From positions 280,635-344,634 of IMG/VR virus record IMGVR_UViG_3300022868_000009: a stretch of 64,000 nucleotides of DNA; one strand, 5' to 3'. This document shows positions 29,778 through 62,046 of this stretch, piece by piece. The first letter of the stretch is position 1. Each line of letters begins with the position of its first letter. The notes below the pieces were generated by a model, which saw nothing but the letters and a program-made list of their open reading frames with translations, had not been told where the DNA came from and did not search any database. Made by a program: the position numbers and the translations under genes.

Positions 29778-29833
29778 AAAGGGCGGAGAATTTTTATAGG
29801 TTCTGGGAGAGTAGACTCCAACTTGCGATATAT
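29778..29833 (+). ncRNA. Repeated small structured RNA, copy 1
   Basis: aaagggcggag-hairpin-gagagtagactccaacttgcg immediately after promoter, no ORF. Confidence 0.6.
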
Positions 29834-29883
29834 TTTTTTTAACACAATTTTTATTTCTTAGAAGTAATCCGTATCTTTGTTAT

Positions 29884-30315: not shown

Positions 30316-30330
30316 CTAAAAAAAATAATT

Positions 30331-30651: not shown

Positions 30652-30704
30652 GAAAGTTTAGAAGGTATTCCGTATCTTTGTATAAATATTAAAATAATAT
30701 AATT

Positions 30705-31166
30705 ATGGAATTAGATAAAGCAAGAATAAAAATGAGAGAATTGTTATCAAAACATGGTCTTGATAATTGGAGTTTTGATTTTGATAGAGCAGTTAGACGT
30801 TTAGGTCAATGTGTTTGGAAAAAGAATAGTATCATGACTCGAAAAATTACTATGTCTAGAATTATGACTGAAAGTAGAACTGATAAAGAAGTTATTAATA
30901 CAATGTTACATGAAATAGCACACGCAATAGATTTTGAAACAAGGGGTAGAAGTGCTCATGATGATGTTTGGAGATCAATTGCATTGAGTATTGGTTGTGA
31001 TGGTAATAGATCTAGTAATGTTGATGTTGAGGTTTCAGAAAAGAATTATAAGTGGTTGGCTATATGTCCAGAGCATGGTGTTTTGGGTGGATGGCAAAGA
31101 AAACCAAAAGATAATAAAATGTGTAAAAAATGTAAAAGTAAAATCATAATAAAGGAAAATAAATAA
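30705..31166 (+). CDS. SprT-like zinc metalloprotease with C-terminal Zn ribbon
   Basis: RRLGQC, TMLHEIAHA, AHDDVW, C..H...C..C. Confidence 0.88.
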   Translation: MELDKARIKMRELLSKHGLDNWSFDFDRAVRRLGQCVWKKNSIMTRKITMSRIMTESRTDKEVINTMLHEIAHAIDFETRGRSAHDDVWRSIALSIGCDGNRSSNVDVEVSEKNYKWLAICPEHGVLGGWQRKPKDNKMCKKCKSKIIIKENK

Positions 31167-31167
31167 C

Positions 31168-31995
31168 ATGAAAATAAAAGAAATAATAAGAAAAATATAT
31201 GATAAAACCGGACATGGATATACTGCTACGGCTATTAGTGTTTTAAAAAAATCTGGTTTGATGGGTGATAAAACACATCAAAAGATTAAGAACATTGTTG
31301 AGAATGAAATTCAAAGATATGAAAAAGAATATTTTGAAAAATATAAGTCTTATATTAGTGAGTATAGATATGAATCACCAACTATGATTTTATCAATAAT
31401 GTATATTGATGGTTTTAAAGGAAAATATACTGATTCTTATAAGAAGATTCAGAAAGAGATTCAAAGAATTGACACATCAGAATTAAAGTCATATAAATCT
31501 TTAATAAAGAAAGCTAAATCTACTGATCATTTGCTAAGTAAGATATCCCATTATAAAAGAGCATTATCATTTCGAGGGGATAAAAAAATTGAAGAGAAAT
31601 TGAAAGATTTAGAGGAGGATTTTCACTCAGATCAGATTATAGAGGATGAGAAGCAATTTTCAGAGAATACTATTCAATTAAAAGATTCCTCTATAATCAA
31701 AATTTATCTTGATCCGAATAACAGAAATACTTTGATGATGGAACAAGAACAAGAAGGTAAAAAAGGTTTTAGGTTAGTTAATCATTTTGCAGCTATACCA
31801 CCATTGAAAGAAACTACTGACATATTTTGGATTGGTGAAAGAACTTCAAAAGCAACTGGTTATAAACATAATTCAGAGGCTTTAATAATAATGAGAGATG
31901 AAAATGATACAATAAGAATATATTATAAAGGAAGTTTATTAATAGAAAATTATTGTGAAGAAGAATTAAAAAAAATTATAAATAAAATTAAATAA
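31168..31995 (+). CDS. Hypothetical protein
   Basis: 275-aa ORF. Confidence 0.75.
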   Translation: MKIKEIIRKIYDKTGHGYTATAISVLKKSGLMGDKTHQKIKNIVENEIQRYEKEYFEKYKSYISEYRYESPTMILSIMYIDGFKGKYTDSYKKIQKEIQRIDTSELKSYKSLIKKAKSTDHLLSKISHYKRALSFRGDKKIEEKLKDLEEDFHSDQIIEDEKQFSENTIQLKDSSIIKIYLDPNNRNTLMMEQEQEGKKGFRLVNHFAAIPPLKETTDIFWIGERTSKATGYKHNSEALIIMRDENDTIRIYYKGSLLIENYCEEELKKIINKIK

Positions 31996-32003
31996 AACAA
32001 ATT

Positions 32004-32210
32004 ATGTGGATAACAATTGGAATAATAATAGGATTAGTAATAGGTGGTTGGTTAGGATATCAGGCTTGTATGGCAAAATATAGACCTACAGAATTACTTA
32101 AATTAGCAAAAATACAAACTGAAATGATTTCAGGTGAAATAACACCGGAAAAGGCTTTAAAAGAGATACATCAAATTGAAATTGAACACCCTGAATTGAA
32201 AAAGAAATGA
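32004..32210 (+). CDS. Small membrane protein
   Basis: N-terminal TM (ITIGIIIGLVIGGWLGY). Confidence 0.7.
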   Translation: MWITIGIIIGLVIGGWLGYQACMAKYRPTELLKLAKIQTEMISGEITPEKALKEIHQIEIEHPELKKK

Positions 32211-32530
32211 AAAAGTATAAATTTATAACAGAAAGTGATTATGGTGATTTGCAACTCATCATTTATTTTGAAGATAGAGATGAATCTATTAAAGTTCAAA
32301 ATGAAATGATAGAACGTGGTTATTTAAAAATCACAGAGACAAATACACAAGATAAAGATTTATATCCATTTTCTGTTTGGTTTGAACCTAAAAATAAAAT
32401 AATGAATGGTGGTCAAAAGAATTCTGAATATATGTTAAGGTATGGTAGATCATTACATTCTGATATATTTATGGAGTATATAGATAATCTGGAAGCATTA
32501 TTTGAGTCTTTAAAAATGGGTTTGTTATAA
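32207..32530 (+). CDS. Hypothetical, C-tag (ESLKMGLL)
   Basis: ORF track. Confidence 0.8.
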   Translation: MKKYKFITESDYGDLQLIIYFEDRDESIKVQNEMIERGYLKITETNTQDKDLYPFSVWFEPKNKIMNGGQKNSEYMLRYGRSLHSDIFMEYIDNLEALFESLKMGLL

Positions 32531-48351: not shown

Positions 48352-48633
48352 ATGTTGTATTATATAAAAGTAAAGGAAGATATGGATATCAGTCGAATAA
48401 CCGATGTTGTTCCATGGTATAATAATGAGGGTTTAACTTTTGTAAAATTTGTTAATTGTTATTGTATTGGTTTTTATGATTATTATAATTATTTTGATAA
48501 TAATGTATCTAGAAAATTATTTTGGTATTCGTATTTTCATATGAAAAATGTAATAATTGAGAGAAAGAAAAAGTGTAAAGACATTGATGAATTTTTAAGT
48601 TATTACGAAGGATGTAAAATGGGATTGCTGTAA
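48352..48633 (+). CDS. Hypothetical, C-tag (EGCKMGLL)
   Basis: Related to 53201; preceded by orphan tag. Confidence 0.8.
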   Translation: MLYYIKVKEDMDISRITDVVPWYNNEGLTFVKFVNCYCIGFYDYYNYFDNNVSRKLFWYSYFHMKNVIIERKKKCKDIDEFLSYYEGCKMGLL

Positions 48634-48685
48634 ATGGAGGAATTAATTCCACGAACCTATCCAGGAATTAGTTACGTTAGAATTA

Positions 48686-49024
48686 TTGAATATGAAATAT
48701 GCGATAGAAATAAATAATATATCAGAGGGTGCGAAATTATTTGATATTATAGATATAGATTTGGGAAGAATAAAAGGTTTTATAGGTGATAGATATTCTT
48801 CAGATAAGGAGATATGGATAGATTTTTTAAAGTTAAGGATTAATCATTATAATCATTTTAATTCTGTAATAGTTTGTTTTTATGAAGGATTAATTTTTGA
48901 AAAGTATATTTATGGTGGTCATATATTTCACAATGTATTGGGTGATAATTATATAGAATTAAATTGTAATGATATGGATTATATTAAATTATTTTTTGAA
49001 GCTAATAAAATGGGATTGTTATGA
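48686..49024 (+). CDS. Hypothetical, C-tag (EANKMGLL)
   Basis: ORF track. Confidence 0.8.
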   Translation: MNMKYAIEINNISEGAKLFDIIDIDLGRIKGFIGDRYSSDKEIWIDFLKLRINHYNHFNSVIVCFYEGLIFEKYIYGGHIFHNVLGDNYIELNCNDMDYIKLFFEANKMGLL

Positions 49025-49241
49025 TTATGAAAGAAAGTATTGAGTATGATTTTAAATTTGCTATAAAGGTGGATGATAAGTTATTAATTAAATTAGTGGT
49101 AAATCATTTATATATTTTGGGTTATAAGTGGTATGGGGGTGGTGATAGGGATGATATATTAGAGGTATGTATTAAATCTAATTATGATGTCATCCTGAAT
49201 TAATGGAGGATTATGTTAGTATTAAAATGGGATTATTATGA
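49021..49241 (+). pseudogene. Internally deleted C-tag gene
   Basis: 5' part resembles 49238; last ~52 bp identical to 3' end of 49534 gene but out of frame. Confidence 0.75.
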
Positions 49242-49537
49242 AAAAGTTTGAAAACACACAATTTAAATTTGCTATAAAGGTGAGTGGTATAGGATTAACT
49301 GAGTTAGTGGTAAATCATTTATATTCTTTGGGTTATGAGTGGTGTGGTGGTGATAAGTGTGAGGTAATAAATGAATGTGCAAAAAATAATGAACATGGAA
49401 TTGGTGTTGAACATGGTAGGATAAGTTATAATGTTTATGAATGGGATTGTGATAAGTGGTATGATATTGATGAATATGTTGAAAAATATGATGAATTAAT
49501 GGAAGAATATATTAGTATTAAAATGGGATTATTATGA
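49238..49537 (+). CDS. Hypothetical, C-tag (ISIKMGLL)
   Basis: Tandem paralog. Confidence 0.8.
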   Translation: MKKFENTQFKFAIKVSGIGLTELVVNHLYSLGYEWCGGDKCEVINECAKNNEHGIGVEHGRISYNVYEWDCDKWYDIDEYVEKYDELMEEYISIKMGLL

Positions 49538-49833
49538 AAGTTAAAAAGTGTGATTATAAATTTGCTGTAGAGGTAAGTGGTGTATTATTAACTGAGTTAT
49601 TAGTAGAACATTTATATTCTTTGGGTTATGAATGGTTTAGTGGTAAGAAAATGAATATAAATGCTCTATGTGAAAGAACAGAATCAAATAAAATTGGTAT
49701 TGATTATAATGGTAAGATAAGTTATAATGTTCACGAAGAGATATGTGATGAGTGGTATGATATTGATGAATATATTGAATGTCATCCTGAATTAATGGAG
49801 GATTATGTTAGTATTAAAATGGGATTATTATAA
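49534..49833 (+). CDS. Hypothetical, C-tag (VSIKMGLL)
   Basis: Tandem paralog. Confidence 0.8.
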   Translation: MKVKKCDYKFAVEVSGVLLTELLVEHLYSLGYEWFSGKKMNINALCERTESNKIGIDYNGKISYNVHEEICDEWYDIDEYIECHPELMEDYVSIKMGLL

Positions 49834-50357
49834 TGATTATAGATAGTCAGGAAGTATTAAACAGATTTATAAAGTTTTTAGAAGAAGATCATCTTGAAGG
49901 TTATATAAAAATTGTAGAAAAATTGAGAGATAAGTTAATTAGATATTGATTTGTTGATGAAATATTGTAGTGATTCTTATGGTAATAATTTTTCTTATGG
50001 TGATGATTATTTTTTAGGTATAACTGAGGAAGGTGAAGCCTTATTAAAAAAAGATAGTAGAATTCATGATGAGATTTTAGGAATTGTGGAAGAAGATGAA
50101 ATTAAATTGATTTTTGTATATTTTAATAAGGGTTCAATTATAAAATATAGTTATCTTGAAGTTTTTAATTATGGGGAGTATAAGAAGCATTTTTTAAGGA
50201 ATCAGAGAAAGTTAAAGTTAGAGAGGGTTAATGGAAAATAAGTGGAGGAATTCCACGAACCTATCCAGGAATTAATTACGTTAGAATTATTGAAAATTTA
50301 TATAAATGTGATTTAAGTAATATAAAGAAGATATGCATTAAATTAAATGATAGTAAT

Positions 50358-50558
50358 ATGCATGAAGTTATGAATTATTTAGGTTATTCAGCTAACATGT
50401 GTTATTATAATTATGGTTATGTGATATATTATATTGGTTTTGGTGTGTATAGATTTTGTGAAAATAATAGGTTTACTGAATTAATAAATGATTGTGAAGA
50501 ATGTAATTTTGAAGAGTTTAAATTTAGTATAGAGTCAAATAAGATGGGATTGTTATAA
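50358..50558 (+). CDS. Hypothetical (possibly 5'-truncated), C-tag (ESNKMGLL)
   Basis: ORF track. Confidence 0.6.
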   Translation: MHEVMNYLGYSANMCYYNYGYVIYYIGFGVYRFCENNRFTELINDCEECNFEEFKFSIESNKMGLL

Positions 50559-50679
50559 AAAATAAATAATGTTAATAGTAATTTTACATAAAAACGAAGA
50601 GGAAAAGAAATTATAGATTTTTGGAAAGAAAATTTTTATTTTGAAAGTTAATGTAGTGATTATATAAAATAGAGATATT

Positions 50680-50943
50680 ATGAAAAAATATTATATAAAA
50701 TTAGACTATAATAGAGATGAAATTTTTGATTATTGTATGCCTTATTTCAAGGAGGATATTATTAGTGATATTAAGATTAAAAATGATTTATTTGTATATT
50801 TAATATATTATACTCATACTGCGAATTACAATTTTTATACAAGTTTTTCTAATAAATTATTATTAGGAAGGGATTATATAATGTGTGATAATCTTGAAGA
50901 GTTTAAATTTAGTATAGAATCTAGTAGAATGGGATTGATATAG
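50680..50943 (+). CDS. Hypothetical, C-tag (ESSRMGLI)
   Basis: Shares EEFKFSIES with 50358. Confidence 0.75.
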   Translation: MKKYYIKLDYNRDEIFDYCMPYFKEDIISDIKIKNDLFVYLIYYTHTANYNFYTSFSNKLLLGRDYIMCDNLEEFKFSIESSRMGLI

Positions 50944-51001
50944 ACATATTTTTTAAATTAAAAGAAGTTTCGTATATTATGTTAAATTAAAAAAGGAAAA
51001 A

Positions 51002-51382
51002 ATGAAATTACAATGGATAAATATATTTATAAAGTATGATGATTTTACTTGGAAGATTTATGATGAAGTTGAGTTTTATTTTAAATCTAAATATCCTGGT
51101 ATTAAATGTGTAGGTAAAAAAGAATTAAAATATGCATTAAAAGATAGATTAGAAGAAAATCATTATTTTCTAGATATTTTTGCTTTTTGTGTAGAATTTT
51201 ATCCTAAAAGAGATAGATTTACAGTATATACACCAATTGGAAAAAATTTTGCTGATTATGGTTTATGTTATAATAAATATACTGAAAGTGTTACTTATTA
51301 TGAATTAACTGTTGATTATGGTGAAAATTTTAAAGAAGAAATTGAAATGTTATTAACATCAATGAATATGGGGGTTCTTTAA
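51002..51382 (+). CDS. Hypothetical, C-tag (SMNMGVL)
   Basis: ORF track. Confidence 0.8.
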   Translation: MKLQWINIFIKYDDFTWKIYDEVEFYFKSKYPGIKCVGKKELKYALKDRLEENHYFLDIFAFCVEFYPKRDRFTVYTPIGKNFADYGLCYNKYTESVTYYELTVDYGENFKEEIEMLLTSMNMGVL

Positions 51383-51753
51383 TGAAAAAATGGTTAAACA
51401 TAAAAATTGACATAAATGGTGATATCATGGGCCAAATGGTTAAGATGATAAATAAAATGAAAAATTTTTATAGTCCAACTTTATCATTTGATAAACATTT
51501 AGAAGAATTGTCAGAATCTATAAAAACTATAAAAGAAAACAGAAGTTTAAAAGATGATAATTTATTTATAAGTTTCTTTTTAGAAAATAATAAGGACTTG
51601 AATTTACATGAATCAAGTTTAATGGTTGTAGATTTATGGAGTGATGATAGATGGAGGGATATCACAAATGAGATATGGATTGAGGATACTAATGTTTTTT
51701 TGGAATATGGTTTAGATGCATTATTAGATAGTATAAATATGGGGTTACTTTAG
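51382..51753 (+). CDS. Hypothetical, C-tag (DSINMGLL)
   Basis: ORF track. Confidence 0.8.
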   Translation: MKKWLNIKIDINGDIMGQMVKMINKMKNFYSPTLSFDKHLEELSESIKTIKENRSLKDDNLFISFFLENNKDLNLHESSLMVVDLWSDDRWRDITNEIWIEDTNVFLEYGLDALLDSINMGLL

Positions 51754-52483: not shown

Positions 52484-52807
52484 ATGAATTATAGAAAATT
52501 TGTGCAAGAACGAATTGGTATTTTTATAGTCTTTACACAAGAAGATTATAATGAAGTTGTTAAAATCTTTGAATCTATTGGATTAACATTTAATCCATTT
52601 TCTAACTTATCATTTAATAGAGTATTTTGTATTACTTTACAAATAAATCCATGGGGTGGTAACAGAGTTTTCAGGGATTCTTATTCATATAGATCATATT
52701 ATGAAAGAGAAAAAGAATATTCCAAATTTTGGGATGTAGATAAATTAAGAGAAGAGAGTAAAGATTTACCAATAAAATATGAAGCAAGAAAGATGGGTTT
52801 ATTATAA
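52484..52807 (+). CDS. Hypothetical, C-tag (EARKMGLL)
   Basis: Tail-to-tail TTATAA overlap with 52802 gene. Confidence 0.8.
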   Translation: MNYRKFVQERIGIFIVFTQEDYNEVVKIFESIGLTFNPFSNLSFNRVFCITLQINPWGGNRVFRDSYSYRSYYEREKEYSKFWDVDKLREESKDLPIKYEARKMGLL

Positions 52808-53146
52808 TAGACCCATTTTGTTTCCTGTGTGATATATTTTGAATTCTTTATTATAATCAGCATATTCTTCTAGGCTTTCAAATACTGTAAAAAATGTATT
52901 AGAAGAATAATTAAATGCGATGAGGGTTTTATTATAACCAATATAATATTCATTGTAACTATAATTGTTAATGCAATGTTCTAATATTTCTTTGTGATGG
53001 GCTTCATCTTCATTGGGTTCATCCCAGTATTTATTCAATTGACTTCTCCAATAATTAATAAGGCTTGTTACTTCTTCCGGAGTTTTGCAGTTAACTAGGA
53101 CTTTATCTGATTGTATATTTTCTAAATATGTACTAAGGTATTTCAT
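52802..53146 (-). CDS. Hypothetical, N-tag (MKYLSTYLE) + C-tag (GNKMGLL)
   Basis: Both motifs; AATATATA upstream. Confidence 0.8.
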   Translation of the reverse strand: MKYLSTYLENIQSDKVLVNCKTPEEVTSLINYWRSQLNKYWDEPNEDEAHHKEILEHCINNYSYNEYYIGYNKTLIAFNYSSNTFFTVFESLEEYADYNKEFKIYHTGNKMGLL

Positions 53147-53200
53147 ATGAAGATATATATTGAATTTGTTTTTTCAAAATAAATTTTGTATTTTATATTT

Positions 53201-53482
53201 ATGAAATTTTATTATTTAGAAGTAAAAGAAAAGGATTGGAATGAAGTTATAAACTATATAACTAAAGTTATTCCTATTTGGAATGAAAAGTTTGATATAA
53301 GTCTTCCTATTAAACATATTGGATTTTATATAGATCTAAAGAATGAATTTGGTTTAAATAATGATAATTTATTATTGTTTCGTTATCATAAATTAAATTT
53401 TAAAACTTGTGATTATATAAAGTGTAAGGATATAGAAGAATTCTTATTTTCTTATGAATCAAGTAAGATGGGATTATTGTAA
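53201..53482 (+). CDS. Hypothetical, C-tag (ESSKMGLL)
   Basis: ORF track, start corrected. Confidence 0.8.
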   Translation: MKFYYLEVKEKDWNEVINYITKVIPIWNEKFDISLPIKHIGFYIDLKNEFGLNNDNLLLFRYHKLNFKTCDYIKCKDIEEFLFSYESSKMGLL

Positions 53483-53503
53483 CATTATTAAATAAAACAA
53501 AGA

Positions 53504-53827
53504 ATGAACATAGCTATCGAGTTATATACTAAGAAAGAGTTATTTAAGGCATGGAAAAAGATGTTAGATTTAGGATATAATTTAGATGTTTGGCATAGAA
53601 TTTACATGGAGAAGGATTATAATTGGATTGGATTTGATTATATAAAAAAAAGGGGTGGTCTTTATATTTATTTTGATTTAGATGAATATATAATGACTGG
53701 TTGGGATGGTTTATATAATATACACATGATTAAATATATTCCTGATGATATGGATTTTATTATCAATCATATTGATATTGATTCGATTGATTCGTGTATA
53801 GAGGGTATTAAATTAGGTTTATTATAG
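53504..53827 (+). CDS. Hypothetical, C-tag (EGIKLGLL)
   Basis: Paralog of 54920/41187. Confidence 0.8.
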   Translation: MNIAIELYTKKELFKAWKKMLDLGYNLDVWHRIYMEKDYNWIGFDYIKKRGGLYIYFDLDEYIMTGWDGLYNIHMIKYIPDDMDFIINHIDIDSIDSCIEGIKLGLL

Positions 53828-53876
53828 ATTTGAAATTATGAGATTTTATAGGATCTACTAAAATGGGATTAATGTA

Positions 53877-54176
53877 ATGAATGAACTTGTATATATTAGT
53901 GTAAATAATAAGGAACAATATGATAGAGTTATACGTATTGCTGAAAATAATGGTTTTAAAACAAGAGGTAATTCCTCTTCTTTACCTGTTAATATTTATC
54001 TTTGTATTAAGGATGCTGTTGAAGGATCTTGGTTAAAGGATGTTATTTATTTTAGTAGTAATGATTATGATCTATATAAAACTGTATTACCAGTTAGGAT
54101 AAAATGTGATTATGAGGATTTTTCAGAAGAATATTTAAAGTTTATAACAGAATCAGATAAGATGGGATTATTATAA
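53877..54176 (+). CDS. Hypothetical, C-tag (ESDKMGLL)
   Basis: ORF track. Confidence 0.8.
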   Translation: MNELVYISVNNKEQYDRVIRIAENNGFKTRGNSSSLPVNIYLCIKDAVEGSWLKDVIYFSSNDYDLYKTVLPVRIKCDYEDFSEEYLKFITESDKMGLL

Positions 54177-54178
54177 TT

Positions 54179-54590
54179 ATGAATGAATCGAATACAATAT
54201 TGTGTGCTGCTTTTTGTGGTACTGGAAAAACTTATATTTGCAATCAGAATAAGAAGGCTATTAAAATTGAATATTGGAAGTATGAAAGAAGGACTAGAAA
54301 AAGAATATGTTAGTGATATAAAAAAGCAAATTGGAAAAGTAGATTATATTTTTTTAAGTACTGACATAGAAGGTTTGAAACTATTAAAAGGTTTTAATAT
54401 TGTACTTGATTACCCTGAAAATAATTTGAGAAATGAATACCTTGATAGGTTTATTGATAGAGATAGTCCTTACGATTTTATAGGGACGTTTATGAAACAT
54501 TGGAATATATGGATAGATGAACTTAAAGATCAAAATTATTGTAAACATATTATATTGAAAAATGGTGAGTACTTGCAAAATATTCTCTAA
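54179..54590 (+). pseudogene. Frameshifted P-loop kinase-like gene
   Basis: Frame from ATG 54179 reads MNESNTILCAAFCGTGKTYIC; the remainder is in the 54183 frame after ~54285. Confidence 0.7.
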
Positions 54591-54620
54591 ATTAAAGACT
54601 ATGTTTTAAATTAAATAACA

Positions 54621-54923
54621 ATGAATGATATAGATATAAATGTAAATGAAGATAATTATATAGAATTTGTCAATTATTTATATAGTATTAATTATATAAC
54701 TAAGAATGATAATGAAAGGTTAGTTAATTGGTATACTGATGTGAATGATTATTTTCAAAAAGAATATAACTCATATGAATATAGATTATTTTTTGATCGT
54801 AAAGAATGGGATATAATAGCTTGTTGTTGTGGCGGTTCTGAATTTTTTAAAAAAGTAACTTTTATTAATAATTTAAAGGAATTAGAGGTTTATATGAATT
54901 GTTTAAAAATGGGGCTATTATGA
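54621..54923 (+). CDS. Hypothetical, C-tag (NCLKMGLL)
   Basis: ORF track. Confidence 0.8.
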   Translation: MNDIDINVNEDNYIEFVNYLYSINYITKNDNERLVNWYTDVNDYFQKEYNSYEYRLFFDRKEWDIIACCCGGSEFFKKVTFINNLKELEVYMNCLKMGLL

Positions 54924-55240
54924 AAAGAATTGCAATAGAGATATATTCCATAGAGAAATTATTTGAAATATGGGAAGAAATGGTTGATTTAGGTTACACT
55001 TTAAGTTCTTGGACTAATATATTTAAGAGAACAGAAATTGATTGGCTTGGTTTTTTAAGTATTGAAAGAGGTGGTATTTATCTTTGTTTTGATTTAGATA
55101 AGTGTATAATGATTGGTTGGGGAAGTCTATATTATGATTCTGGAAAAAAGTTTATTATTAAAGATTTTGAATTAATTATAGATAGTAGTAAAGATGATAT
55201 TAGATTTCATCTAAATTCAATTAAGATGGGGTTATTATAA
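54920..55240 (+). CDS. Hypothetical, C-tag (NSIKMGLL)
   Basis: ATGA overlap at 5' end, TTATAA overlap at 3' end. Confidence 0.8.
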   Translation: MKRIAIEIYSIEKLFEIWEEMVDLGYTLSSWTNIFKRTEIDWLGFLSIERGGIYLCFDLDKCIMIGWGSLYYDSGKKFIIKDFELIIDSSKDDIRFHLNSIKMGLL

Positions 55241-55603
55241 TAGTCCGAGTTTATTTCCTTGTATCAATATATCAAGATCCATTCCATATTCTTTTTTTAA
55301 CCAATCATCACAACTTATAAAAGAATCTTTATAAAATGACACATATTCTAATAGAAACTTCATTGAGCTCCAACACTTATCAAAGCGTTGACCATCATCT
55401 AATGTAAAAAATGTTTTATCTTTTGAAAAAGCAACCCAAAAATTTTCTTTAAAATTTACTCTAGAATATTCTATATCATATTTTTCCTCAATTAATTTTA
55501 TTATAAATTTTGTTTCTTTATGAGGTATATCAGTTATTACAACAATATTATCCTCTTTATTTTCATTGTATGTATTAAGATATTTCATTTTCAAATGTTT
55601 CAA
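55235..55603 (-). CDS. Hypothetical, doubled N-tag (KHLK-MKYLNTYNE) + C-tag (QGNKLGLL)
   Basis: Both motifs; core related to 61463/61750 (ITDIP). Confidence 0.8.
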   Translation of the reverse strand: MKHLKMKYLNTYNENKEDNIVVITDIPHKETKFIIKLIEEKYDIEYSRVNFKENFWVAFSKDKTFFTLDDGQRFDKCWSSMKFLLEYVSFYKDSFISCDDWLKKEYGMDLDILIQGNKLGLL

Positions 55604-55611
55604 ATCTTATT

Positions 55612-56163
55612 TTGTTTTATATATTAATTTGTTTTTTTAGAATATTTTTTTTATCTTTCAATATGAAAATAAATATAATGTATGCGGGGATGGCGGATGA
55701 TATTATGCTTCCAATGTTACAAGTTCCAACTTTCATAATAATCCAAGTTTATTTGCTTCTATTTTTATTTGATGGAGCCTTTGCTAGAAATGGTTGGGAA
55801 AGTCAAAAAGAAGATATAAGACAAACGTTATTGTCTGGTAATAATGAGAATTCATGGCACAGGGAGGTATATTTAAAATATGAATCAGACACTCCAACTT
55901 TTTCATTAGAAGAAAAATGTGTTATATTATCTGATATAGATAAAGATGAATGTTGGAAATTGACATTTGATTATAATGGAAAGCGCAGAGAACTAATTTA
56001 TTATCATCATCAAAACTTTTATGATGTGTGGCCTGATAATATAAAGGATATTAATCATTTATTTAGTATTGGTGCTACTTTTGAATATTTAACAGAACCT
56101 AAATTAAAAGAAATGTTGAAGACAAGATGTACTGGTTATTTATATGATCAAGTGACACCATAA
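55612..56163 (+). CDS. Hypothetical protein, start uncertain
   Basis: ORF track. Confidence 0.5.
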   Translation: MFYILICFFRIFFLSFNMKINIMYAGMADDIMLPMLQVPTFIIIQVYLLLFLFDGAFARNGWESQKEDIRQTLLSGNNENSWHREVYLKYESDTPTFSLEEKCVILSDIDKDECWKLTFDYNGKRRELIYYHHQNFYDVWPDNIKDINHLFSIGATFEYLTEPKLKEMLKTRCTGYLYDQVTP

Positions 56164-56217
56164 GAAACAGAAATAATTCAAATGAATAGAAGGATTTATA
56201 TTAATAAAATAGATATA

Positions 56218-56697
56218 TTAATATAATCCCATTTTATTTGCATTATAAAGGTCTGGATTTTCTTTCCAAAACCATTCCCAATATTCTTCTAAATTATTAT
56301 AAGGTAATTGGTTATTATAACAATTTAAATATTCTAATCTTTTAGATAATTCAGGTAATTCAGTTAATTGGTTACCATCACAATCTAAATATTTTAACTC
56401 TTTTGGTAATTCAGGCAATTTAGTTAATTTATTATTATAACAATATAATATTTCTAACCCTTTTGGTAGTTCAGGTAATTCAATTAATTTGTTGTTGTCA
56501 CAATATAACATTTCTAATCCTTTTGGTAATTCAGGTAATTCAGTTAATTGATTATTATAACACATTAATTTTTCTAACCCTTTAGGTAATTCAGGTAATT
56601 CAGTTAAATTTAAATTAACTAAATTTAATATTTTACCATCATCACTTAGATGATCTTTTATTAATTGGTTTTCTGAATATGTTTTTAAATATTTCAT
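56218..56697 (-). CDS. Leucine-rich-repeat protein (20-aa LPELPKGLE.L.C.NN.L repeats) with N-tag and C-tag
   Basis: About 5 LPX-type repeats; MKYLKTYSE...ANKMGLY. Confidence 0.9.
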   Translation of the reverse strand: MKYLKTYSENQLIKDHLSDDGKILNLVNLNLTELPELPKGLEKLMCYNNQLTELPELPKGLEMLYCDNNKLIELPELPKGLEILYCYNNKLTKLPELPKELKYLDCDGNQLTELPELSKRLEYLNCYNNQLPYNNLEEYWEWFWKENPDLYNANKMGLY

Positions 56698-56718
56698 CTA
56701 TTTTATAATTTTATTGAC

Positions 56719-57102
56719 TTACATAAGTCCTAATTTACCTGATTCAAATACATATGGGTTATTATGAAAGAATATTTTCATAATAAATAATATTAGTTCA
56801 TAATCTTTTATTATTTGGTGTCCATCATTTTTATTTGAAGATTCTTTTATCCAATTTGGATCTGATACAACTGCAACTTGCTGTTCAACTTTTTGTAATA
56901 TTATTTGAAATAGATTTCCTTCTCGTTTTAACACAATAGTTGTGTATACTCCGTTATAATCTATTTCAAGGAATCCATTTCTAATATAAATTTTAAATTT
57001 GGTATCTTTAAACATATCTTTTATTGTATCAACAAAGAAATCTTGATTGTTATCATTAACTGAAATCTCATTTATCATTTGATATGTCTTTAAATGTTTC
57101 AT
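56719..57102 (-). CDS. Hypothetical, N-tag (MKHLKTYQMINE) + C-tag (ESGKLGLM)
   Basis: Both motifs. Confidence 0.8.
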   Translation of the reverse strand: MKHLKTYQMINEISVNDNNQDFFVDTIKDMFKDTKFKIYIRNGFLEIDYNGVYTTIVLKREGNLFQIILQKVEQQVAVVSDPNWIKESSNKNDGHQIIKDYELILFIMKIFFHNNPYVFESGKLGLM

Positions 57103-57123
57103 CTATTTTATAATTTTATTGAC

Positions 57124-57492
57124 TTACAAGACACCAAGATTTTTTGTCCCATTATACATATTTATCATATTTTGTAATTCATTCATAAATTCATCTTTAG
57201 TTATTAATATATCTGAGTGTTTATAATAACCGCAAGGACCATAAATACGATTTAATTTATAATGAATTGTTCTACTTTCATGTTGTACACAGCAACTATA
57301 CACCATTTTTCTTTTATCTTCCTCTTTTTCAAGTATATCACAACATAATTCTATTTTTGTTCTATGTACATCAAATTTAAAATCATTTATAAGTTTATCA
57401 TATATTTCAATTGCTTCTTTTGCGTTATTAAATTCAACTGATATAAACTTATCTTCATCTATATTTTCATTATATGTTTTAAGGTATTTCAT
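57124..57492 (-). CDS. Hypothetical, N-tag (MKYLKTYNE) + C-tag (TKNLGVL)
   Basis: Both motifs. Confidence 0.8.
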   Translation of the reverse strand: MKYLKTYNENIDEDKFISVEFNNAKEAIEIYDKLINDFKFDVHRTKIELCCDILEKEEDKRKMVYSCCVQHESRTIHYKLNRIYGPCGYYKHSDILITKDEFMNELQNMINMYNGTKNLGVL

Positions 57493-57962
57493 TATAATAA
57501 TCCTAGTTTATTTGCTTCTAAATCTGCTTTAAGGTCTTCACTTTTAAGGTATTCTAATATTTGTGAAAGTTTTTTATAATTTTTTAAATTTTTACTAACC
57601 CTTGTTAAAAGACTAAATTTATCTCTATTATTATCTTCAATAAGATAAGCAATAACATCAACAATTTTACTAGTATTAATATCAACTGAATCTAATACTT
57701 CTAGATGTGTATAATTACCTAATTTAATATTTTCTGGTATTTTTATAAATACTTGTTCATATTTATCACCATGTAAAATATATTGATATTTATTATATAT
57801 TTTAGCACATTCCTTTTTAATATCTGATATTAGTTTATTAAAATTATCAAAAATTGTTTTATCATTTATTTGTTTATAAAGCAATTCTTTTTGTTTATAA
57901 AATGATTCTTGTTGTTTATAGTTTTCTTCTATGTTTTCGTTATATGTTTCACTTATGATCAT
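57492..57962 (-). CDS. Hypothetical, degenerate N-tag (ETYNE) + C-tag (EANKLGLL)
   Basis: ORF track. Confidence 0.75.
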   Translation of the reverse strand: MIISETYNENIEENYKQQESFYKQKELLYKQINDKTIFDNFNKLISDIKKECAKIYNKYQYILHGDKYEQVFIKIPENIKLGNYTHLEVLDSVDINTSKIVDVIAYLIEDNNRDKFSLLTRVSKNLKNYKKLSQILEYLKSEDLKADLEANKLGLL

Positions 57963-58082
57963 ATTGTTTTGTTTGTTTTATATATTAATTTGTTTTTTTA
58001 GAATTTTTTTCTTATATTACAATAATTATTAAAAATTATGAAAGAATTAATTTGGTTAAATATATGTTATAAAGGTCTTATG

Positions 58083-58325
58083 TCAAAAGAAATGTATTTC
58101 TACATATTCATCTATGATGATTGGATGATATCTTTTAATATCTCTCACTATATCATCTACAATTTCTTTTAGTTTTATTATATCTGTATTTGGTGGAACA
58201 AATAAGTAAATTTCTGAATCATCTTTACACAAACCCTTTTTATTCAAATAATATGGTGTATTTTTAAATATATCATCAATAATATATTTAAATTTAAATG
58301 ATTCATACTTTTTTATATATTTCAT
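58083..58325 (-). CDS. Hypothetical, N-tag only (MKYIKKYES)
   Basis: ORF track. Confidence 0.7.
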   Translation of the reverse strand: MKYIKKYESFKFKYIIDDIFKNTPYYLNKKGLCKDDSEIYLFVPPNTDIIKLKEIVDDIVRDIKRYHPIIIDEYVEIHFF

Positions 58326-58335
58326 AATTATTAGA

Positions 58336-58746
58336 TTATAAAAGACCCATTTGACCTGTTATTAATAATCTTTTTACTTTTTTTAATGGTACTAAATAAT
58401 TTTCCCAGTTTTCTGGACTATCATCTATACCATCTGTTATATCTTTATCTTCCCAAACAGATATTGGTATTTTATTATCCTTTGTAAAGATAGTGTTTGC
58501 ACCATTTTGATCAAATCGTATAATCTCTTCATCAAATAAATTAAAAATTGTTCGACTTGTTTTTATATTATCATCAATATATGAATTATAGTCAGTAATT
58601 AAATGTTTTGCATATTGATTAAACCATTTACAACCATTCTTTATAGCTAAATTAGTATAAGTAAAATATTCATCAATATTACTTACTTCAAACACAAATA
58701 ATACATTTGGTATTGTACTTTCATTATATGTTTTTAAATATTTCAT
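58336..58746 (-). CDS. Hypothetical, N-tag + C-tag (TGQMGLL)
   Basis: Both motifs. Confidence 0.8.
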   Translation of the reverse strand: MKYLKTYNESTIPNVLFVFEVSNIDEYFTYTNLAIKNGCKWFNQYAKHLITDYNSYIDDNIKTSRTIFNLFDEEIIRFDQNGANTIFTKDNKIPISVWEDKDITDGIDDSPENWENYLVPLKKVKRLLITGQMGLL

Positions 58747-58926
58747 TATAGTTTATATATTTATTTTTTTATTTAAGAAAATTTTAACTATTTTTTTAAT
58801 ACCTTTAGTTTTAACTATTGGTATATTTTTAAAATAATTATTTAATTCATCAACCATTTTAATTCTTAACTTAGATGTAATGGTCATAGACTTAGCAAAT
58901 TGATTATATGTGTCTAATTTATTCAT

Positions 58927-59352
58927 TTATAATAGTCCTAATTTAGTAGATTCAAATTTTGATTCTATATTTTCACTATGAATATATTCTATTATTTTTT
59001 CTTCAAATTCCGTAGAGCAACTCTCAATATAATAATTAGTGTCATTCACAGATTGAAGAAATATTCTATAAGAAGTCGAAATTTCTTCATCATACTTTAT
59101 GATATATAATGATAAATCATCATCTGGATCTACAATTGTTCTTCTATCTATATTAGTAGGTTTATCTATAAAATCTGAACCAGATACATTTACTTTAACA
59201 TCTGTTCTACTATTCAAATATTCATTAGGTTTACCATATTTATTTATTAAATACTCACATCTATATAATAATTCTTCATCATCTTTATAAATATGATGAA
59301 CAGTACCATTATCATATATTAATGATTCATTATAAGTTTTTAAATATTTCAC
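58927..59352 (-). CDS. Hypothetical, N-tag + C-tag (ESTKLGLL)
   Basis: Both motifs; RCEYLI.KYG family. Confidence 0.8.
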   Translation of the reverse strand: MKYLKTYNESLIYDNGTVHHIYKDDEELLYRCEYLINKYGKPNEYLNSRTDVKVNVSGSDFIDKPTNIDRRTIVDPDDDLSLYIIKYDEEISTSYRIFLQSVNDTNYYIESCSTEFEEKIIEYIHSENIESKFESTKLGLL

Positions 59353-59471
59353 AAGACTATATATTAATTTTTTATTTTAAGATAAATTTTCTATATTAAA
59401 ATTATGGATATTAAAGAAAACCTTAAAAATTATTATGAAATTAGATAAATATTTCTTAATTAAAGATAAAT

Positions 59472-59795
59472 ATGATTAAAATTAATATTACGGGAATTAA
59501 TTGTAATGAATTTGAAAAGTTACAAAAAATATTCTTTGATCAAAATATACCTTGGTATTATAGTGGTTATAAATTACAATCATCCGATGATTGTAATTAT
59601 TATCATAACATTTATATTGTTTCAAAAATCGTTGTCATGAGAAATGATAACCATGAAAAAGAAGAATATTATATGACCTTTAAAAAAGATAATATAATCT
59701 CAAAAGACCAAGATTTAATTGAATATAAATATGATGAAATGGATGAGAATACATTAAAAAGTTATTTTAACGGTTTACAACTAGGATTATTATGA
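59472..59795 (+). CDS. Hypothetical, C-tag (NGLQLGLL)
   Basis: ORF track. Confidence 0.8.
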   Translation: MIKINITGINCNEFEKLQKIFFDQNIPWYYSGYKLQSSDDCNYYHNIYIVSKIVVMRNDNHEKEEYYMTFKKDNIISKDQDLIEYKYDEMDENTLKSYFNGLQLGLL

Positions 59796-60110
59796 TATCA
59801 ATAAATATAGAAAATATAAGTCTAAATGACTTCAAGAAATTGCAAATACATATGATTGATCAAAATATTCCTTGGATTGATGGTGATTGGGAAGTTTGGG
59901 TAGATGGATATTGGTCATTTATAATTAATCATAAAAAAAAATATCTTACTAATTGATCAATATACATCAACTGGTAAACCAGTTGATGGTTACCTTAGAT
60001 ATAATATGCAATTGTGTAATGTTTCATCTCCAATCGTTTTAAGTGTTGAAGAAATGCTTGATTTAAATATATACGAATATTTGGAGGCGAAAAAGTTTAA
60101 TTTATTATAA
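59792..60110 (+). pseudogene. Frameshifted paralog of 59472 (ends EAKKFNLL)
   Basis: DQNIPW motif; frame breaks near A-run at 59933-59941. Confidence 0.65.
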
Positions 60111-60355
60111 TAGATCCATCTTATTCGATGCAATATACTCTTGTAAATTAAAATCTTTAGTTATATCAGAACCATTTAACTTACCTAACAAAATACCAAT
60201 TTCAGTATATTTTTCAATAATTTGATTATAAAACCAAGTAGTCCAATGATTTCCAATATAAGTTTTATCATCTATATTAATTAGTAAATTAATTTCTTTC
60301 CAAAACCATTCCTTATATCACTAATACTTTCATCATATGTCTTTAAGTATTTCAT
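60105..60355 (-). pseudogene. Disrupted N-tag/C-tag gene (MKYLKTYDE ... ASNKMDLL)
   Basis: Both termini readable, frame broken. Confidence 0.65.
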
Positions 60356-60572
60356 GAATAATTTAAAAACTTTTGTTTTATATATTAAAATTTAGATTTG
60401 AATATCAATACCCAGAATTTATATTCCAACCTCTACAATATCATAAAATTAATTTTTATACCAAGAAATATTCCTTATATTTAAGTATTGGAATTTCGAA
60501 AAAATTGAAGAATTTTTATTTTTTGAACAAATTCCGTATATTATAAATGATGAAATACATAAACTACTAAAT

Positions 60573-61463
60573 ATGGAAGAAAAAACAAAAATATTATTAA
60601 ACGGCAAAGAAAATAAGAGCGAACTTATTAACTTACTTACAAAAGTTGATGTTTCTTGCTCTACTCGTGAACTAAATTCTGAGTTGATAGTTAAAATCAA
60701 ACATTTTAACAAATGTATCGAAGAAAATATCGAATTCAGAAATAAATTCAATGTTAATGAAAGATTTGAGTTCTTAGAAGATCTTACCAACATGATTATT
60801 GATGGTAAAGGTAACTCATTGATAGTTATAGGTGAAGGTGGACTTGGTAAAACATTTACTGTATTAAGCACTTTATCAAAAAGAACAAAAACTGGATTTC
60901 TAAACCTTTTCAAGAAAAAAGAAGATGTTCACATAGTTAAAGGTTTCTCAACAGCTAGAGGTCTATATGATACATTATATGATAATAGAGATAAATTAAT
61001 TTTATTTGACGACTGTGATTCAATCTTAGAAGATAAAACAGCTATTAATATTTTAAAATCAGCTTTAGATTCTTATGATACTAGAATCGTTACATGGTCT
61101 AAATTTTTGAAAAATAAAAACAATTATCCACAATCATTCGAATTTACAGGTAGAATAATCTTTATCTCAAATAAAAAGAAAACTCAAATACCACAACCAA
61201 TCTTAACAAGAGGTTATGTAGTTGATTTAGAAATGAGCAATGGTGAGAAAATCGACAGAATGGCTCACATCATGCCAACACTTATCGAAGATAAAGGTAA
61301 AGGTAGATGGAGTTTAAATGATGGTTTTACGGCTTTAGAATTCATTAGAATAAATATAGATGATGTTAAAGAACTAAGTATTAGAACATTAGTAGATGTT
61401 TTAAGAATAATGAAATCAAGAAAAAATTGGGAAAAATTAGCTTTATATACAATAACAGAATAA
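60573..61463 (+). CDS. AAA+/P-loop ATPase
   Basis: Walker A GEGGLGKT, Walker B ILFDDCD, IIFISN, ILTR. Confidence 0.85.
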   Translation: MEEKTKILLNGKENKSELINLLTKVDVSCSTRELNSELIVKIKHFNKCIEENIEFRNKFNVNERFEFLEDLTNMIIDGKGNSLIVIGEGGLGKTFTVLSTLSKRTKTGFLNLFKKKEDVHIVKGFSTARGLYDTLYDNRDKLILFDDCDSILEDKTAINILKSALDSYDTRIVTWSKFLKNKNNYPQSFEFTGRIIFISNKKKTQIPQPILTRGYVVDLEMSNGEKIDRMAHIMPTLIEDKGKGRWSLNDGFTALEFIRINIDDVKELSIRTLVDVLRIMKSRKNWEKLALYTITE

Positions 61464-61753
61464 TGACAACATATATAACAGATATACCATCAGAATATAT
61501 ATTATATCTTGATAAAATAATCAGTGAATATTATAATATGAAATCTATAATTAGACCTAATAAAAGAATCATAAAATATGATTATTATTTTATAAGTATC
61601 AATAAATATAATGATAATTGTCTGTGTTATTCAGGTATGTGTTATTTACATGAACTCATAGGACCAACCAGTGAAACTATTAATTATGTTGATTGGTTAG
61701 AAAAACATAATTTAACATACAAATTAGAATCAACCAAATTAGGATTATTATGA
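61463..61753 (+). CDS. Hypothetical, C-tag (ESTKLGLL)
   Basis: Tandem paralog of 61750. Confidence 0.8.
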   Translation: MTTYITDIPSEYILYLDKIISEYYNMKSIIRPNKRIIKYDYYFISINKYNDNCLCYSGMCYLHELIGPTSETINYVDWLEKHNLTYKLESTKLGLL

Positions 61754-62046
61754 CATTATATATAACAGACATACCTCAAAAAGAAATATTATATCTTGAT
61801 AAAATAATCAGTGAATATTATAATATGGAAACTATAACTCGTAGTATTAATAGAATTAATTTCACATTATATGATTATATTTATATAAGTGTTGGTAAAA
61901 ATTGTACTGAGGGATTATATTATTCAGATATGAATTATTTAAAACATATTAAAAAACAGAACCATAAAACTATCAATTATATTGATTGGTTGAAAAAGAA
62001 TAATTTATTCTATAAATTAGAATCAGCCAAATTAGGATTATTATGA
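61750..62046 (+). CDS. Hypothetical, C-tag (ESAKLGLL)
   Basis: Tandem paralog. Confidence 0.8.
   Translation: MTLYITDIPQKEILYLDKIISEYYNMETITRSINRINFTLYDYIYISVGKNCTEGLYYSDMNYLKHIKKQNHKTINYIDWLKKNNLFYKLESAKLGLL

What the first reader, a model, noticed from the sequence alone, without database searches (positions are those of the whole stretch)
52484..62046. Two-route delivery: the same C-tag and even the same cores appear with or without the N-tag
Seen: + strand tagged genes behind TAnnTTTG promoters have only the C-tag, while interleaved AATATATA-driven genes (mostly - strand here) have both tags. One core (ITDIP...I.E.Y) occurs N-tagged at 55235(-) and without N-tag at 61463/61750. RNase H, the amidoligase-like protein and the 58083 ORF have only the N-tag. 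Inference: a combinatorial grammar, [promoter class + optional packaging tag]-[variable core]-[common C-tag], lets the phage deliver effectors to the same target either pre-made from the capsid or by early synthesis.
Basis: inference. Interest (0 to 1): 0.82.

Follow-up and report, generated by a model that had tools for sequence, protein, structure and literature searches.

The report
Two portable peptide tags on phage effectors
A 348-kb phage of Bacteroidota-type hosts puts the same 14-residue tail on about 40% of the small proteins sampled and a 9-residue T4-like head-targeting peptide on a subset, which looks like an address-label system for a large, fast-changing set of host-takeover proteins, though what the labels bind is untested.

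Summary
In the window, 46 of 126 ORFs end in [ML]-G-[LVI]-[LIMF]-stop (0.07 expected from composition). Sixteen start with MKYLKTYNE-like peptides (0.01 expected). Both tags vary at synonymous sites, so the peptides are what is conserved.

N-tagged genes sit almost only in transcription units headed by AATATATA placed 5-8 nt before the ATG (15/16 against 10/110, p = 5e-12). This repeats in 45 kb of the same genome outside the window. One core family (55235(-), 61463(+), 61750(+)) does occur with and without the N-tag. It is the only mixed family among nine multi-member families.

The N-tag also occurs in other huge phages that lack the C-tag. It is absent from bacterial genomes, is predicted disordered, and resembles the cleaved T4 capsid targeting sequence MKTYQEFIAE. 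The C-tag is an extra helix plus a GLL end. This lineage adds it to unrelated cores (LRR, ankyrin, a widespread small phage domain).

The promoter claim for C-only genes fails inside 52-62 kb. Consensus Bacteroidota-type promoters lie at 22-43 kb.

Packaging and a shared target remain inferences. The two-route model is plausible (compare T4 Alt and ModA/ModB) but unproven.

The parts
52484..52807 (+). C-only gene (107 aa, ends ARKMGLL). Its last Leu codon and stop overlap those of the next gene.
52802..53146 (-). N+C gene (MKYLSTYLEN ... NKMGLL). AATATATA lies at 53154-53161(-), 15 nt before the ATG.
53201..55240 (+). Run of five C-only genes (53201-53482, 53504-53827, 53877-54176, 54621-54923, 54920-55240) plus untagged 54183-54590 (phrog_4182). 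No consensus early promoter upstream.
55235..55603 (-). N+C gene with the ITDIP core. TTG start gives MKHLK, then MKYLNTYNEN. AATATATA at 55618-55625(-).
56218..56697 (-). N+C gene whose core is an LPX-type leucine-rich repeat. In the AF2 model residues 1-7 are disordered and the tail is helix 148-155 followed by GLY.
56719..57492 (-). Two N+C genes inside the operon with no promoter of their own (56719-57102, MKHLKTYQ|MINEISVN; 57124-57492).
57492..57962 (-). First gene of the operon, with a degenerate N-tag (MIISETYNEN) and a C-tag. AATATATA at 57979-57986(-).
58083..58325 (-). N-only ORF (80 aa, MKYIKKYES).
58336..59352 (-). N+C genes 58336-58746 and 58927-59352 (GTG start), each behind AATATATA (58754-58761, 59358-59365). 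Between them is the 57-aa ORF 58753-58926 with a weak N-like start.
59472..59795 (+). C-only gene (ends LQLGLL).
59957..60386 (-). Decayed N+C gene: an MKYLKTYDES start, then a stop after 24 codons, with a KMDLL end in another frame. AATATATA at 60379-60386(-).
60372..60400 (+). TTTG-N21-TAGATTTG, a Bacteroidota-type promoter-like site in front of the ATPase operon.
60573..61463 (+). Untagged P-loop ATPase (phrog_1250; weak AAA and clamp-loader similarity). First gene of the operon that holds the two C-only ITDIP genes.
61463..62046 (+). Two C-only genes with the ITDIP core (61463-61753, 61750-62046).
11525..12130 (+). RNase H (Pfam PF00075) with an N-tag-like start MRNLKTYED and no C-tag. AATATATA at 11511-11518.
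18135..19208 (-). Amidoligase_2-like protein, N-only (MKYLITYKQL in front of the conserved LEFNRKDK start). AATATATA at 19217-19224(-).
19245..21760 (.). Second cluster of tagged genes on both strands with divergent AATATATA promoters. Includes the decayed N+C gene 19984-20307.
22222..32530 (+). Array of C-only genes interleaved with consensus early promoters (TTAGAAGGTATTCCGTATCTTTGTAT followed by AGGAGG).
48352..51753 (+). Further array of C-only genes. 49534-49833 was modelled: pLDDT 88, tag = helix 85-95 followed by MGLL.

Best explanation
The window comes from a 348-kb phage of the huge-phage clade that infects Bacteroidota-type hosts. About 45 kb of it is an accessory-gene region holding a large, fast-turning-over set of small proteins.

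These proteins are built from three modules: an optional N-terminal peptide, a variable core and a common C-terminal tail. The cores include LRR, ankyrin and a widespread small alpha/beta phage domain. Both tags act as peptides, not as DNA elements.

N-tag (MKYLKTYNE). It is a disordered, portable extension found only on genes of the phage's own non-early AATATATA promoter class. I infer that it works like the T4 capsid targeting sequence. On that reading it loads late-made proteins into the prohead, is probably clipped after the conserved Glu, and the proteins then enter the next cell with the DNA.

C-tag. It is an extra amphipathic helix with a small-xxx-Gly pattern, ending in a free hydrophobic [ML]-G-L-L carboxy terminus. 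I infer that it docks all these proteins onto one common partner in the infected cell. That partner is not identified; a protease or unfoldase, or a DNA-bound hub, are candidates.

Shown here: the tags, their position specificity, peptide-level conservation, modularity, the promoter association and the one shared core. Inferred: packaging, cleavage, and the existence and identity of a common partner.
For: Identity of the phage. The genome is IMG/VR contig 3300023257_000007, 348,222 bp. Its baseplate wedge protein is 45% identical to that of the 735-kb phage LR756501. It is 25-37% identical to other huge phages and Lak phages, and it also matches Tenacibaculum, Flavobacterium and Chryseobacterium jumbo phages.

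Peptide-level selection and position specificity.

N-tag.
- Its link to AATATATA units is seen in the window and repeated outside it.
- It keeps the same promoter spacing in LR745206.1 and seven other AT-rich viral contigs that lack the C-tag.
- BLAST of the promoter-plus-tag cassette finds 21, 11 and 9 places in three 630-640-kb phages.
- Only 2 hits occur in 185,579 bacterial genomes. Both are MAG scaffolds; one has the length of a viral contig and carries 3 N-tag ORFs.
- Promoter-less genes inside operons also carry it.
- Residues 1-7 have pLDDT below 50 in a model with mean pLDDT 91.
- It has been gained or lost on amidoligase relatives and added in front of a retained Met.
- The T4 CTS is a roughly 10-residue cleaved N-terminal peptide, MKTYQEFIAE, and is the only conserved part of a diverse set of injected defence proteins (PMC8442874, PMC3012670). 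Short variants here start MKTYNEY and MKTYEDY.

C-tag.
- After trimming, 82 tagged ORFs fall into 57 BLAST clusters that HMM iteration does not merge.
- It sits on LRR and ankyrin proteins.
- A profile search of 1.84 billion proteins found 51 relatives of the commonest core. The 35 that lack the tag match the profile only up to positions 81-93.
- Arrays of C-tagged genes with the same early promoter occur in two other metagenome contigs with 30-31% GC.

Effector setting. An Acb3 CBASS inhibitor lies beside tagged genes. Several decayed tagged genes are present.

Precedent for two routes. T4 Alt is packaged and injected, while its paralogues ModA and ModB are not (PMC5512222).
Against: There is no virion proteome, transcript map or binding data for this phage or any relative, and none of them is cultured.

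The N-tag also sits on RNase H, an enzyme not known to be packaged in any phage.

AATATATA also drives replication-type genes, so 'late' is not established for N-tagged genes.

The T4 protease motif is (L/I)-x-E (from my own knowledge of T4), whereas here it is Y-x-E. In several variants the Glu is shifted or missing. A T4-type prohead protease was not looked for in this genome.

The C-tag helix is modelled with high confidence (pLDDT about 90), so it may pack on its own core rather than be free to dock.

Only one core family spans both classes.
Confidence: 0.42

Rival explanations
1. The N-tag is a real peptide signal but not for the capsid. It would mark proteins of the non-early class for something else inside the cell, such as recognition by a protease or chaperone, a subcellular site, or control of stability.
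For: The tag sits on RNase H and on an amidoligase-like enzyme. The AATATATA class includes replication-type genes. The P3 residue before the conserved Glu is Tyr, not the Leu/Ile of the T4 cleavage motif.
Against: The closest known peptide of the same length, position and KTY(N/Q)E core is the T4 CTS (PMC8442874). The tag is confined to viruses. Its carriers are diverse small proteins, LRR and ankyrin proteins, as expected of injected effectors.
Confidence: 0.25
2. The C-tag is a degradation signal. The hydrophobic free C-terminus makes the takeover proteins short-lived through a host or phage AAA+ protease, which limits their action to a time window.
For: The end is invariably free and non-polar, [ML]-G-L-L, and preceded by Lys. 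One tag on very many unrelated proteins is what a degron looks like. Non-polar C-terminal residues are known determinants of degradation in bacteria (established knowledge: ssrA tag, Parsell and Sauer 1990).
Against: The motif does not resemble the ssrA end ...LAA. The conserved part is 14 residues with a helix and a small-xxx-Gly pattern, more than known C-degrons need. There is no experimental stability data.
Confidence: 0.15
3. The tags are not signals. They are the best-conserved ends of one or two old paralogue families that diverged beyond recognition, and the C-terminal helix is simply part of the fold.
For: Protein-language-model features place two members of different BLAST clusters next to the same unnamed viral clusters. 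The helix is modelled with pLDDT about 90. Tandem duplication is evident.
Against: Tag-less relatives of the commonest core end before the tag. The same tail sits on LRR and ankyrin repeat proteins. The N-tag is absent from most amidoligase relatives and precedes a retained Met in two genes. Residues 1-7 are disordered.
Confidence: 0.12
4. The conservation is at nucleic-acid level. The N-tag would be the start region of leaderless or short-leader mRNAs from AATATATA promoters. The C-tag would be part of a promoter, ribosome-binding or recombination cassette.
For: AATATATA ends 5-8 nt before the ATG, so the transcripts may be nearly leaderless. Thr ACA in the N-tag and Gly GGA in the C-tag are over-used. 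Where an early promoter follows, the tag ends TTA CTT TAA A, directly joined to the promoter.
Against: Other synonymous sites vary as in the rest of the genome, including Leu TTA/CTT, which differ at two bases. Promoter-less genes inside operons carry the N-tag. GGA use is the same whether or not a gene follows closely. The Met/Leu alternation at -4 makes sense only for a peptide.
Confidence: 0.06
5. The C-tag is a sliding-clamp-binding motif that tethers the proteins to DNA-loaded clamps.
For: The last five residues, K/Q-[ML]-G-L-[LF], resemble the C-terminal clamp-binding peptide of E. coli Pol II (QLGLF) and the consensus QL[S/D]LF (PMC3716654). Three HU paralogues carry a related ...ELG(L/I) end.
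Against: The Gln described as highly conserved in that motif is Lys in 59 of 82 tags and Gln in only 5. RNase H and the exonuclease in the window lack the tail. It is hard to see why about 40% of small proteins would need a clamp.
Confidence: 0.07

Closest known systems
T4 capsid targeting sequence (CTS) of the internal proteins IPI-III
   Same: A roughly 10-residue N-terminal peptide starting MK and containing KTY(Q/N)E. It sits on otherwise unrelated, fast-evolving small proteins, is portable, and is found in a myovirus with a T4-type baseplate wedge (PMC8442874, PMC3012670).
   Different: The sequence is MKYLKTYNE, not MKTYQEFIAE. The residue at P3 of the presumed cleavage site is Tyr, not Ile/Leu. 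The tag is also on enzymes (RNase H, amidoligase). It is used by dozens of genes per genome rather than three. Packaging and cleavage are untested here.
T4 Alt versus ModA/ModB (paralogues delivered from the capsid or made early)
   Same: One protein family is supplied both as an injected virion protein and as a product of early genes (PMC5512222). Here the ITDIP core occurs with and without the N-tag.
   Different: Only one such family was found in about 110 kb. The expression times and virion content are unknown.
Short C-terminal docking peptides: clamp-binding motif, SspB XB peptide for ClpX, SSB tip, encapsulin targeting peptide, poxvirus ankyrin/PRANC proteins
   Same: A short conserved C-terminal element on diverse proteins addresses them to one partner. 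Repeat-type binding domains (LRR, ankyrin) combined with a common C-terminal module recall poxvirus ankyrin/F-box-like proteins (own knowledge).
   Different: The sequence fits none of them. Lys replaces the conserved Gln of the clamp motif (PMC3716654). There is only loose likeness to the encapsulin consensus SDGSLGIGSLKRS (PMC8346489). No partner is known.
T4-type promoter-early stem-loop cassettes and T4 late promoter TATAAATA
   Same: Repeated terminator-promoter cassettes lie between small early genes. A single AT-rich box close to the start site marks the phage's own promoter class. The comparison with T4 rests on my own knowledge.
   Different: The early consensus is of the Bacteroidota type (TAnnTTTG). 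The second box is AATATATA and lies only 5-8 nt from the ATG. Neither was mapped experimentally.

Membership tests
T4-type capsid targeting sequence | Short peptide at the extreme N-terminus, shared by otherwise unrelated proteins | tested here: met
   18 N-terminal against 1 internal occurrence of the core motif. Carriers fall into many unrelated clusters. The peptide has been gained or lost on amidoligase relatives.
T4-type capsid targeting sequence | Sequence similarity to MKTYQEFIAE | tested here: inconclusive
   Shares MK and KTY(N/Q)E. Variants MKTYNEY and MKTYEDY exist. The peptide is too short for a statistical test.
T4-type capsid targeting sequence | Cleavage by the prohead protease after (L/I)-x-E | not testable with these tools
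   Glu at position 9 in 39 of 52 tags, preceded by Y-x rather than L/I-x. The protease gene was not located and there is no proteomics.
T4-type capsid targeting sequence | Carriers are found inside the virion | not testable with these tools
   The phage is uncultured. No RNA run was listed and proteomic data cannot be searched with these tools.
Beta-clamp-binding motif QL[S/D]LF | Conserved Gln at the first position | tested here: not met
   Lys in 59, Gln in 5 of 82 tags. Motif definition from PMC3716654.
Beta-clamp-binding motif QL[S/D]LF | Hydrophobic-x-hydrophobic-hydrophobic at or near the C-terminus | tested here: met
   [ML]-G-L-[LIF] at the carboxy end in all tags.
Encapsulin family 1 targeting peptide | Consensus SDGSLGIGSLKRS / TVGSL at the C-terminus | tested here: not met
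   Only an LG(L/I) element is shared. Here a helix precedes the end (PMC8346489).
ssrA-like C-terminal degron | C-terminal ...LAA recognised by ClpX | tested here: not met
   The end is GLL, never LAA. Degradation itself cannot be tested here.
Bacteroidota sigma-A promoter (TTTG / TAnnTTTG) | A -7 box TAnnTTTG upstream of the C-only genes | tested here: inconclusive
   34 + strand sites of TAT[AC]TTTGT[AT], against about 3 per strand expected. 29 lie in 22.2-42.6 kb, interleaved with C-only genes, and the same arrangement is seen in L138. None precedes the nine C-only genes in 52.5-62 kb.
Leucine-rich repeat proteins | Pfam LRR match and a solenoid model | tested here: met
   LRR_4 at 8e-17 for 56218-56697. 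AF2 pLDDT 91 with a regular strand repeat.
Amidoligase_2 (PF12224) | Match to the family profile | tested here: inconclusive
   No Pfam hit at E 0.01. Atlas feature score 0.95 and structural TM 0.5-0.56 to Amidoligase_2 clusters.

The most novel reading that the evidence does not exclude
The tagged proteins are a phage-encoded adaptor repertoire. Each variable core (LRR, ankyrin, small alpha/beta domains) would bind a different host factor, such as a defence protein. The common helix-GLL tail would hand that factor to one shared machine, for instance a protease or unfoldase. A subset would be pre-loaded into the capsid through a T4-like targeting peptide, so that it acts before any phage gene is expressed. 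This would be a bacterial-virus counterpart of the ankyrin/F-box families of poxviruses.
Probability: 0.15. Interest if true: 0.92.

Novelty: new variant of a known kind. Interest (0 to 1): 0.78.

Why it matters
Huge phages carry hundreds of small genes of unknown function. If two short peptides sort them into those that travel in the capsid and those that dock on a common partner, a large part of that unknown gene content becomes classifiable from sequence alone.

The N-tag would extend T4's capsid-targeting principle to a distant clade with genomes up to about 640 kb. It would also predict which proteins are injected.

The C-tag offers a simple experimental handle. A 14-residue peptide could be used as bait to find the hub that these phages act on in Bacteroidota-type hosts.

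Neither tag motif was found in the searchable literature.

Tried and rejected
- Stop-codon recoding: reading through TAG or TGA does not lengthen ORFs, so the standard code applies.
- Pfam and PHROGs on 51 tagged proteins: only LRR was found.
- Fold search of the modelled C-only protein against the PDB: no match at E <= 0.001.
- Word-based homologue search with an N+C protein: only the protein itself was found.
- One superfamily for all cores: BLAST and iterated HMMs do not merge the clusters. Language-model features hint that several C-only cores are related.
- C-tag Gly codon as a ribosome-binding site for the next gene: GGA use does not depend on coupling.
- Transcript evidence: DNA runs from salt-lake and marine metagenomes hold the region, but no RNA run was listed.
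- The 735-kb relative, 42 kb around its baseplate gene: no tags there.
- GluQRS-like end NNGLL as a tag: its LR745206.1 homologue lacks it, so this was left as uncertain.
- Literature: the jumbo-phage comparative review and the polyvalent-protein paper do not mention such tags.
- Whole-genome contingency test: the full 348-kb contig could not be fetched. The test was run on the window plus about 45 kb of other loci.

Full report
WHAT THE WINDOW IS

The sequence has 24% G+C and uses the standard genetic code. It belongs to IMG/VR contig 3300023257_000007 of 348,222 bp. DNA runs from salt-lake and marine metagenomes hold it.

Its baseplate wedge protein (4910-6862) is 45% identical to that of the 735-kb phage LR756501. 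It is 25-37% identical to other huge phages and Lak phages. It also matches jumbo phages of Tenacibaculum, Flavobacterium and Chryseobacterium. The phage therefore belongs to the huge-phage clade associated with Bacteroidota hosts.

The left 19 kb holds larger genes: a baseplate gene, peptidase M23, thymidylate synthase, glycosyltransferases and RNase H. From 19 to 62 kb the genes are small.

THE C-TAG

- 46 of 126 called ORFs end in [ML]-G-[LVIM]-[LMYIVF]-stop, against 0.07 expected from composition.
- Pooling the window with four other loci of the same genome gives 80 of 213 ORFs.
- The motif is terminal 75 times and internal 3 times.
- Over 82 distinct tagged ORFs the conserved stretch is 14 residues: [DE][LI]xx-hydrophobic-hydrophobic-E-[ASG]-x-K-[ML]-G-L-L.
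- Codons vary synonymously (Leu TTA/CTA/TTG/CTT, Lys AAA/AAG) and Met alternates with Leu. GGA is over-used for Gly, but this does not depend on whether a gene follows closely. The conservation is therefore at the peptide level.

After trimming the tag, the 82 ORFs fall into 57 BLAST clusters, and iterated HMM searches do not merge them. The tail sits on an LPX-type leucine-rich repeat protein and on an ankyrin protein.

A profile of the commonest core found 51 relatives among 1.84 billion representative proteins. Sixteen carry the tag. The other 35 are single-domain or tandem-repeat proteins of other phages, one of them with a polyvalent-type ADP-ribosyltransferase domain. These match the profile only up to positions 81-93 and end differently.

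The AF2 model of 49534-49833 (pLDDT 88) shows the tag as an additional helix, residues 85-95, followed by a non-helical MGLL. No PDB fold matched. The tail is therefore an addition made in this lineage to unrelated cores.

Among IMG/VR loci fetched with three codon versions of the tag, only four related contigs carry two or more tagged ORFs. Look-ups of two tagged relatives then found arrays of C-tagged genes in two further metagenome contigs with 30-31% G+C. In one of these the arrays are joined to the same early promoter.

THE N-TAG

A position-weight score separates 34 of 213 ORFs that start with MKYLKTYNE-like peptides. Sixteen of them are in the window.

Synonymous sites vary about as in the rest of the genome, except for Thr ACA.

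The tag is wider than the C-tag:
- LR745206.1 has six N-tagged ORFs in 40 kb and no C-tag there.
- Seven more AT-rich viral contigs have it, one on an ankyrin protein.
- BLAST of the promoter-plus-tag cassette finds 21, 11 and 9 places in three 630-640-kb phages.
- In 185,579 bacterial genomes the pattern occurs twice, both on MAG scaffolds. One has the length of a viral contig and carries three N-tag ORFs.

The tag is portable:
- Amidoligase relatives start MILEFNR or MLILEFNR, while the nearest ones start MKYLxTYxxL-LEFNR.
- Two genes read MKHLKTYQ|MINEISVN and MKYLKTYNR|MINEISVN, with the old Met retained.
- In the LRR model (pLDDT 91) residues 1-7 have pLDDT below 50.

PROMOTERS

AATATATA is not enriched as a word, but 14 of its 49 copies start 10-34 nt before a start codon, against 1.2 expected (P = 9e-12). 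Ten start at -13 to -16, which leaves 5-8 nt before the ATG.

Units headed by this box contain:
- 15 of 16 N-tagged genes against 10 of 110 others in the window (p = 4.7e-12);
- 14 of 18 against 24 of 69 in the loci outside the window (p = 0.0014);
- pooled, p = 1.5e-13.

The one exception in the window (20304) follows a decayed tagged gene in such a unit. The same box also heads the baseplate operon, a HAD-like gene, an exonuclease and the GluQRS-like unit. It therefore marks the phage's general non-early class.

The other class is a cassette of hairpin plus T-run, then TTAGAAGGTATTCCGTATCTTTGTAT, then AGGAGG. There are 34 + strand sites of TAT[AC]TTTGT[AT], of which 29 lie in 22.2-42.6 kb, among C-only genes, tRNAs and HU genes. 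No N-tagged gene lies in such a unit.

Inside the flagged 52.5-62 kb, none of the nine C-only genes has this consensus. Only TTTG-N21-TAGATTTG at 60372-60400 precedes the ATPase operon that carries 61463 and 61750. What holds is that C-only genes are not in AATATATA units (1 of 34).

SHARED CORES

With both tags trimmed, 55235(-) matches 61750(+) at 30% identity over 90 residues (E = 7e-5). 61463 and 61750 match each other at E = 3e-24. This is the only mixed family among nine multi-member families (87 tagged proteins, 60 clusters). N-tagged genes mostly also carry the C-tag: 27 of 34, against 53 of 179 of the others (p = 9e-8).

INTERPRETATION

The closest known thing to the N-tag is the T4 capsid targeting sequence. 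It is a roughly 10-residue N-terminal peptide, MKTYQEFIAE, which is cleaved off. It is the only conserved part of a diverse set of injected defence proteins (PMC8442874, PMC3012670). T4 also supplies one enzyme family by both routes: Alt is injected, while ModA and ModB are not (PMC5512222).

Packaging, cleavage and a common partner for the tail remain inferences. An N-tag on RNase H argues for caution.

For the tail I considered the following:
- A clamp-binding motif. The end resembles Pol II QLGLF, but the conserved Gln is Lys in 59 of 82 tags (PMC3716654).
- An encapsulin-type targeting peptide. The likeness is only loose (PMC8346489).
- A degron.
- A tether to a shared machine.

LRR and ankyrin cores and a neighbouring Acb3 CBASS inhibitor fit an effector repertoire in conflict with host defence. 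No paper in the searchable library contains either tag motif.

Noticed in passing
28696-29010, 36692-37000, 42643-42951 (+): Three HU-type DNA-binding paralogues (75-91% identical) all carry a 12-residue C-terminal extension ending EER(E/A)ELG(L/I)-stop. This end resembles the C-tag minus its last residue.
   Followed up: partly
22272-42583 (+): About 29 repeated cassettes of hairpin plus T-run, a conserved Bacteroidota-type promoter and an AGGAGG ribosome-binding site. They separate small genes, nine tRNA genes (33091-41891), an RNA ligase (39046-40029) and a SprT-like gene (30705-31166).
   Followed up: partly
52802-52807 and 55235-55240: Convergent tagged genes overlap by the palindrome TTATAA, so that the last Leu codon and stop of one C-tag are read on the other strand as those of the other.
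   Followed up: no
19984-20307 (+) and 59957-60355 (-): Decayed genes that still show an N-tag start and a C-tag end but are broken by stops or frameshifts. Shorter tag remnants end at 53877, 49241 and 55733(-).
   Followed up: partly
12781-13953 (-): The thymidylate synthase is 390 aa against a 266-position Pfam profile matched end to end. This implies an insert of about 120 residues.
   Followed up: no
62362-63189 (+): Truncated glutamyl/glutaminyl-tRNA synthetase-like gene (catalytic domain only, 275 aa), 77% identical in DNA to LR745206.1. It ends NNGLL here but not in that relative.
   Followed up: partly
L041:5856-6671 (same genome, outside the window): A gene matching the CBASS inhibitor Acb3 (Pfam 2e-37) lies next to genes starting MKTYNEY and MKKINTYSEY.
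   Followed up: no
22851-23183, 25084-25416, 25801-26166; L138: Where an early promoter follows directly, the C-tag ends TTA CTT TAA A instead of the usual TTA TTA TAA. The tag end and the upstream edge of the promoter seem to be copied as one unit.
   Followed up: no
L047:921-2090, L045, L043, L033 (other viral contigs, 20-22% G+C): The N-tag is followed by a second conserved stretch (SLRDKMKPKS.EEI) on ankyrin-repeat and other proteins. What kind of virus these contigs come from was not determined.
   Followed up: no
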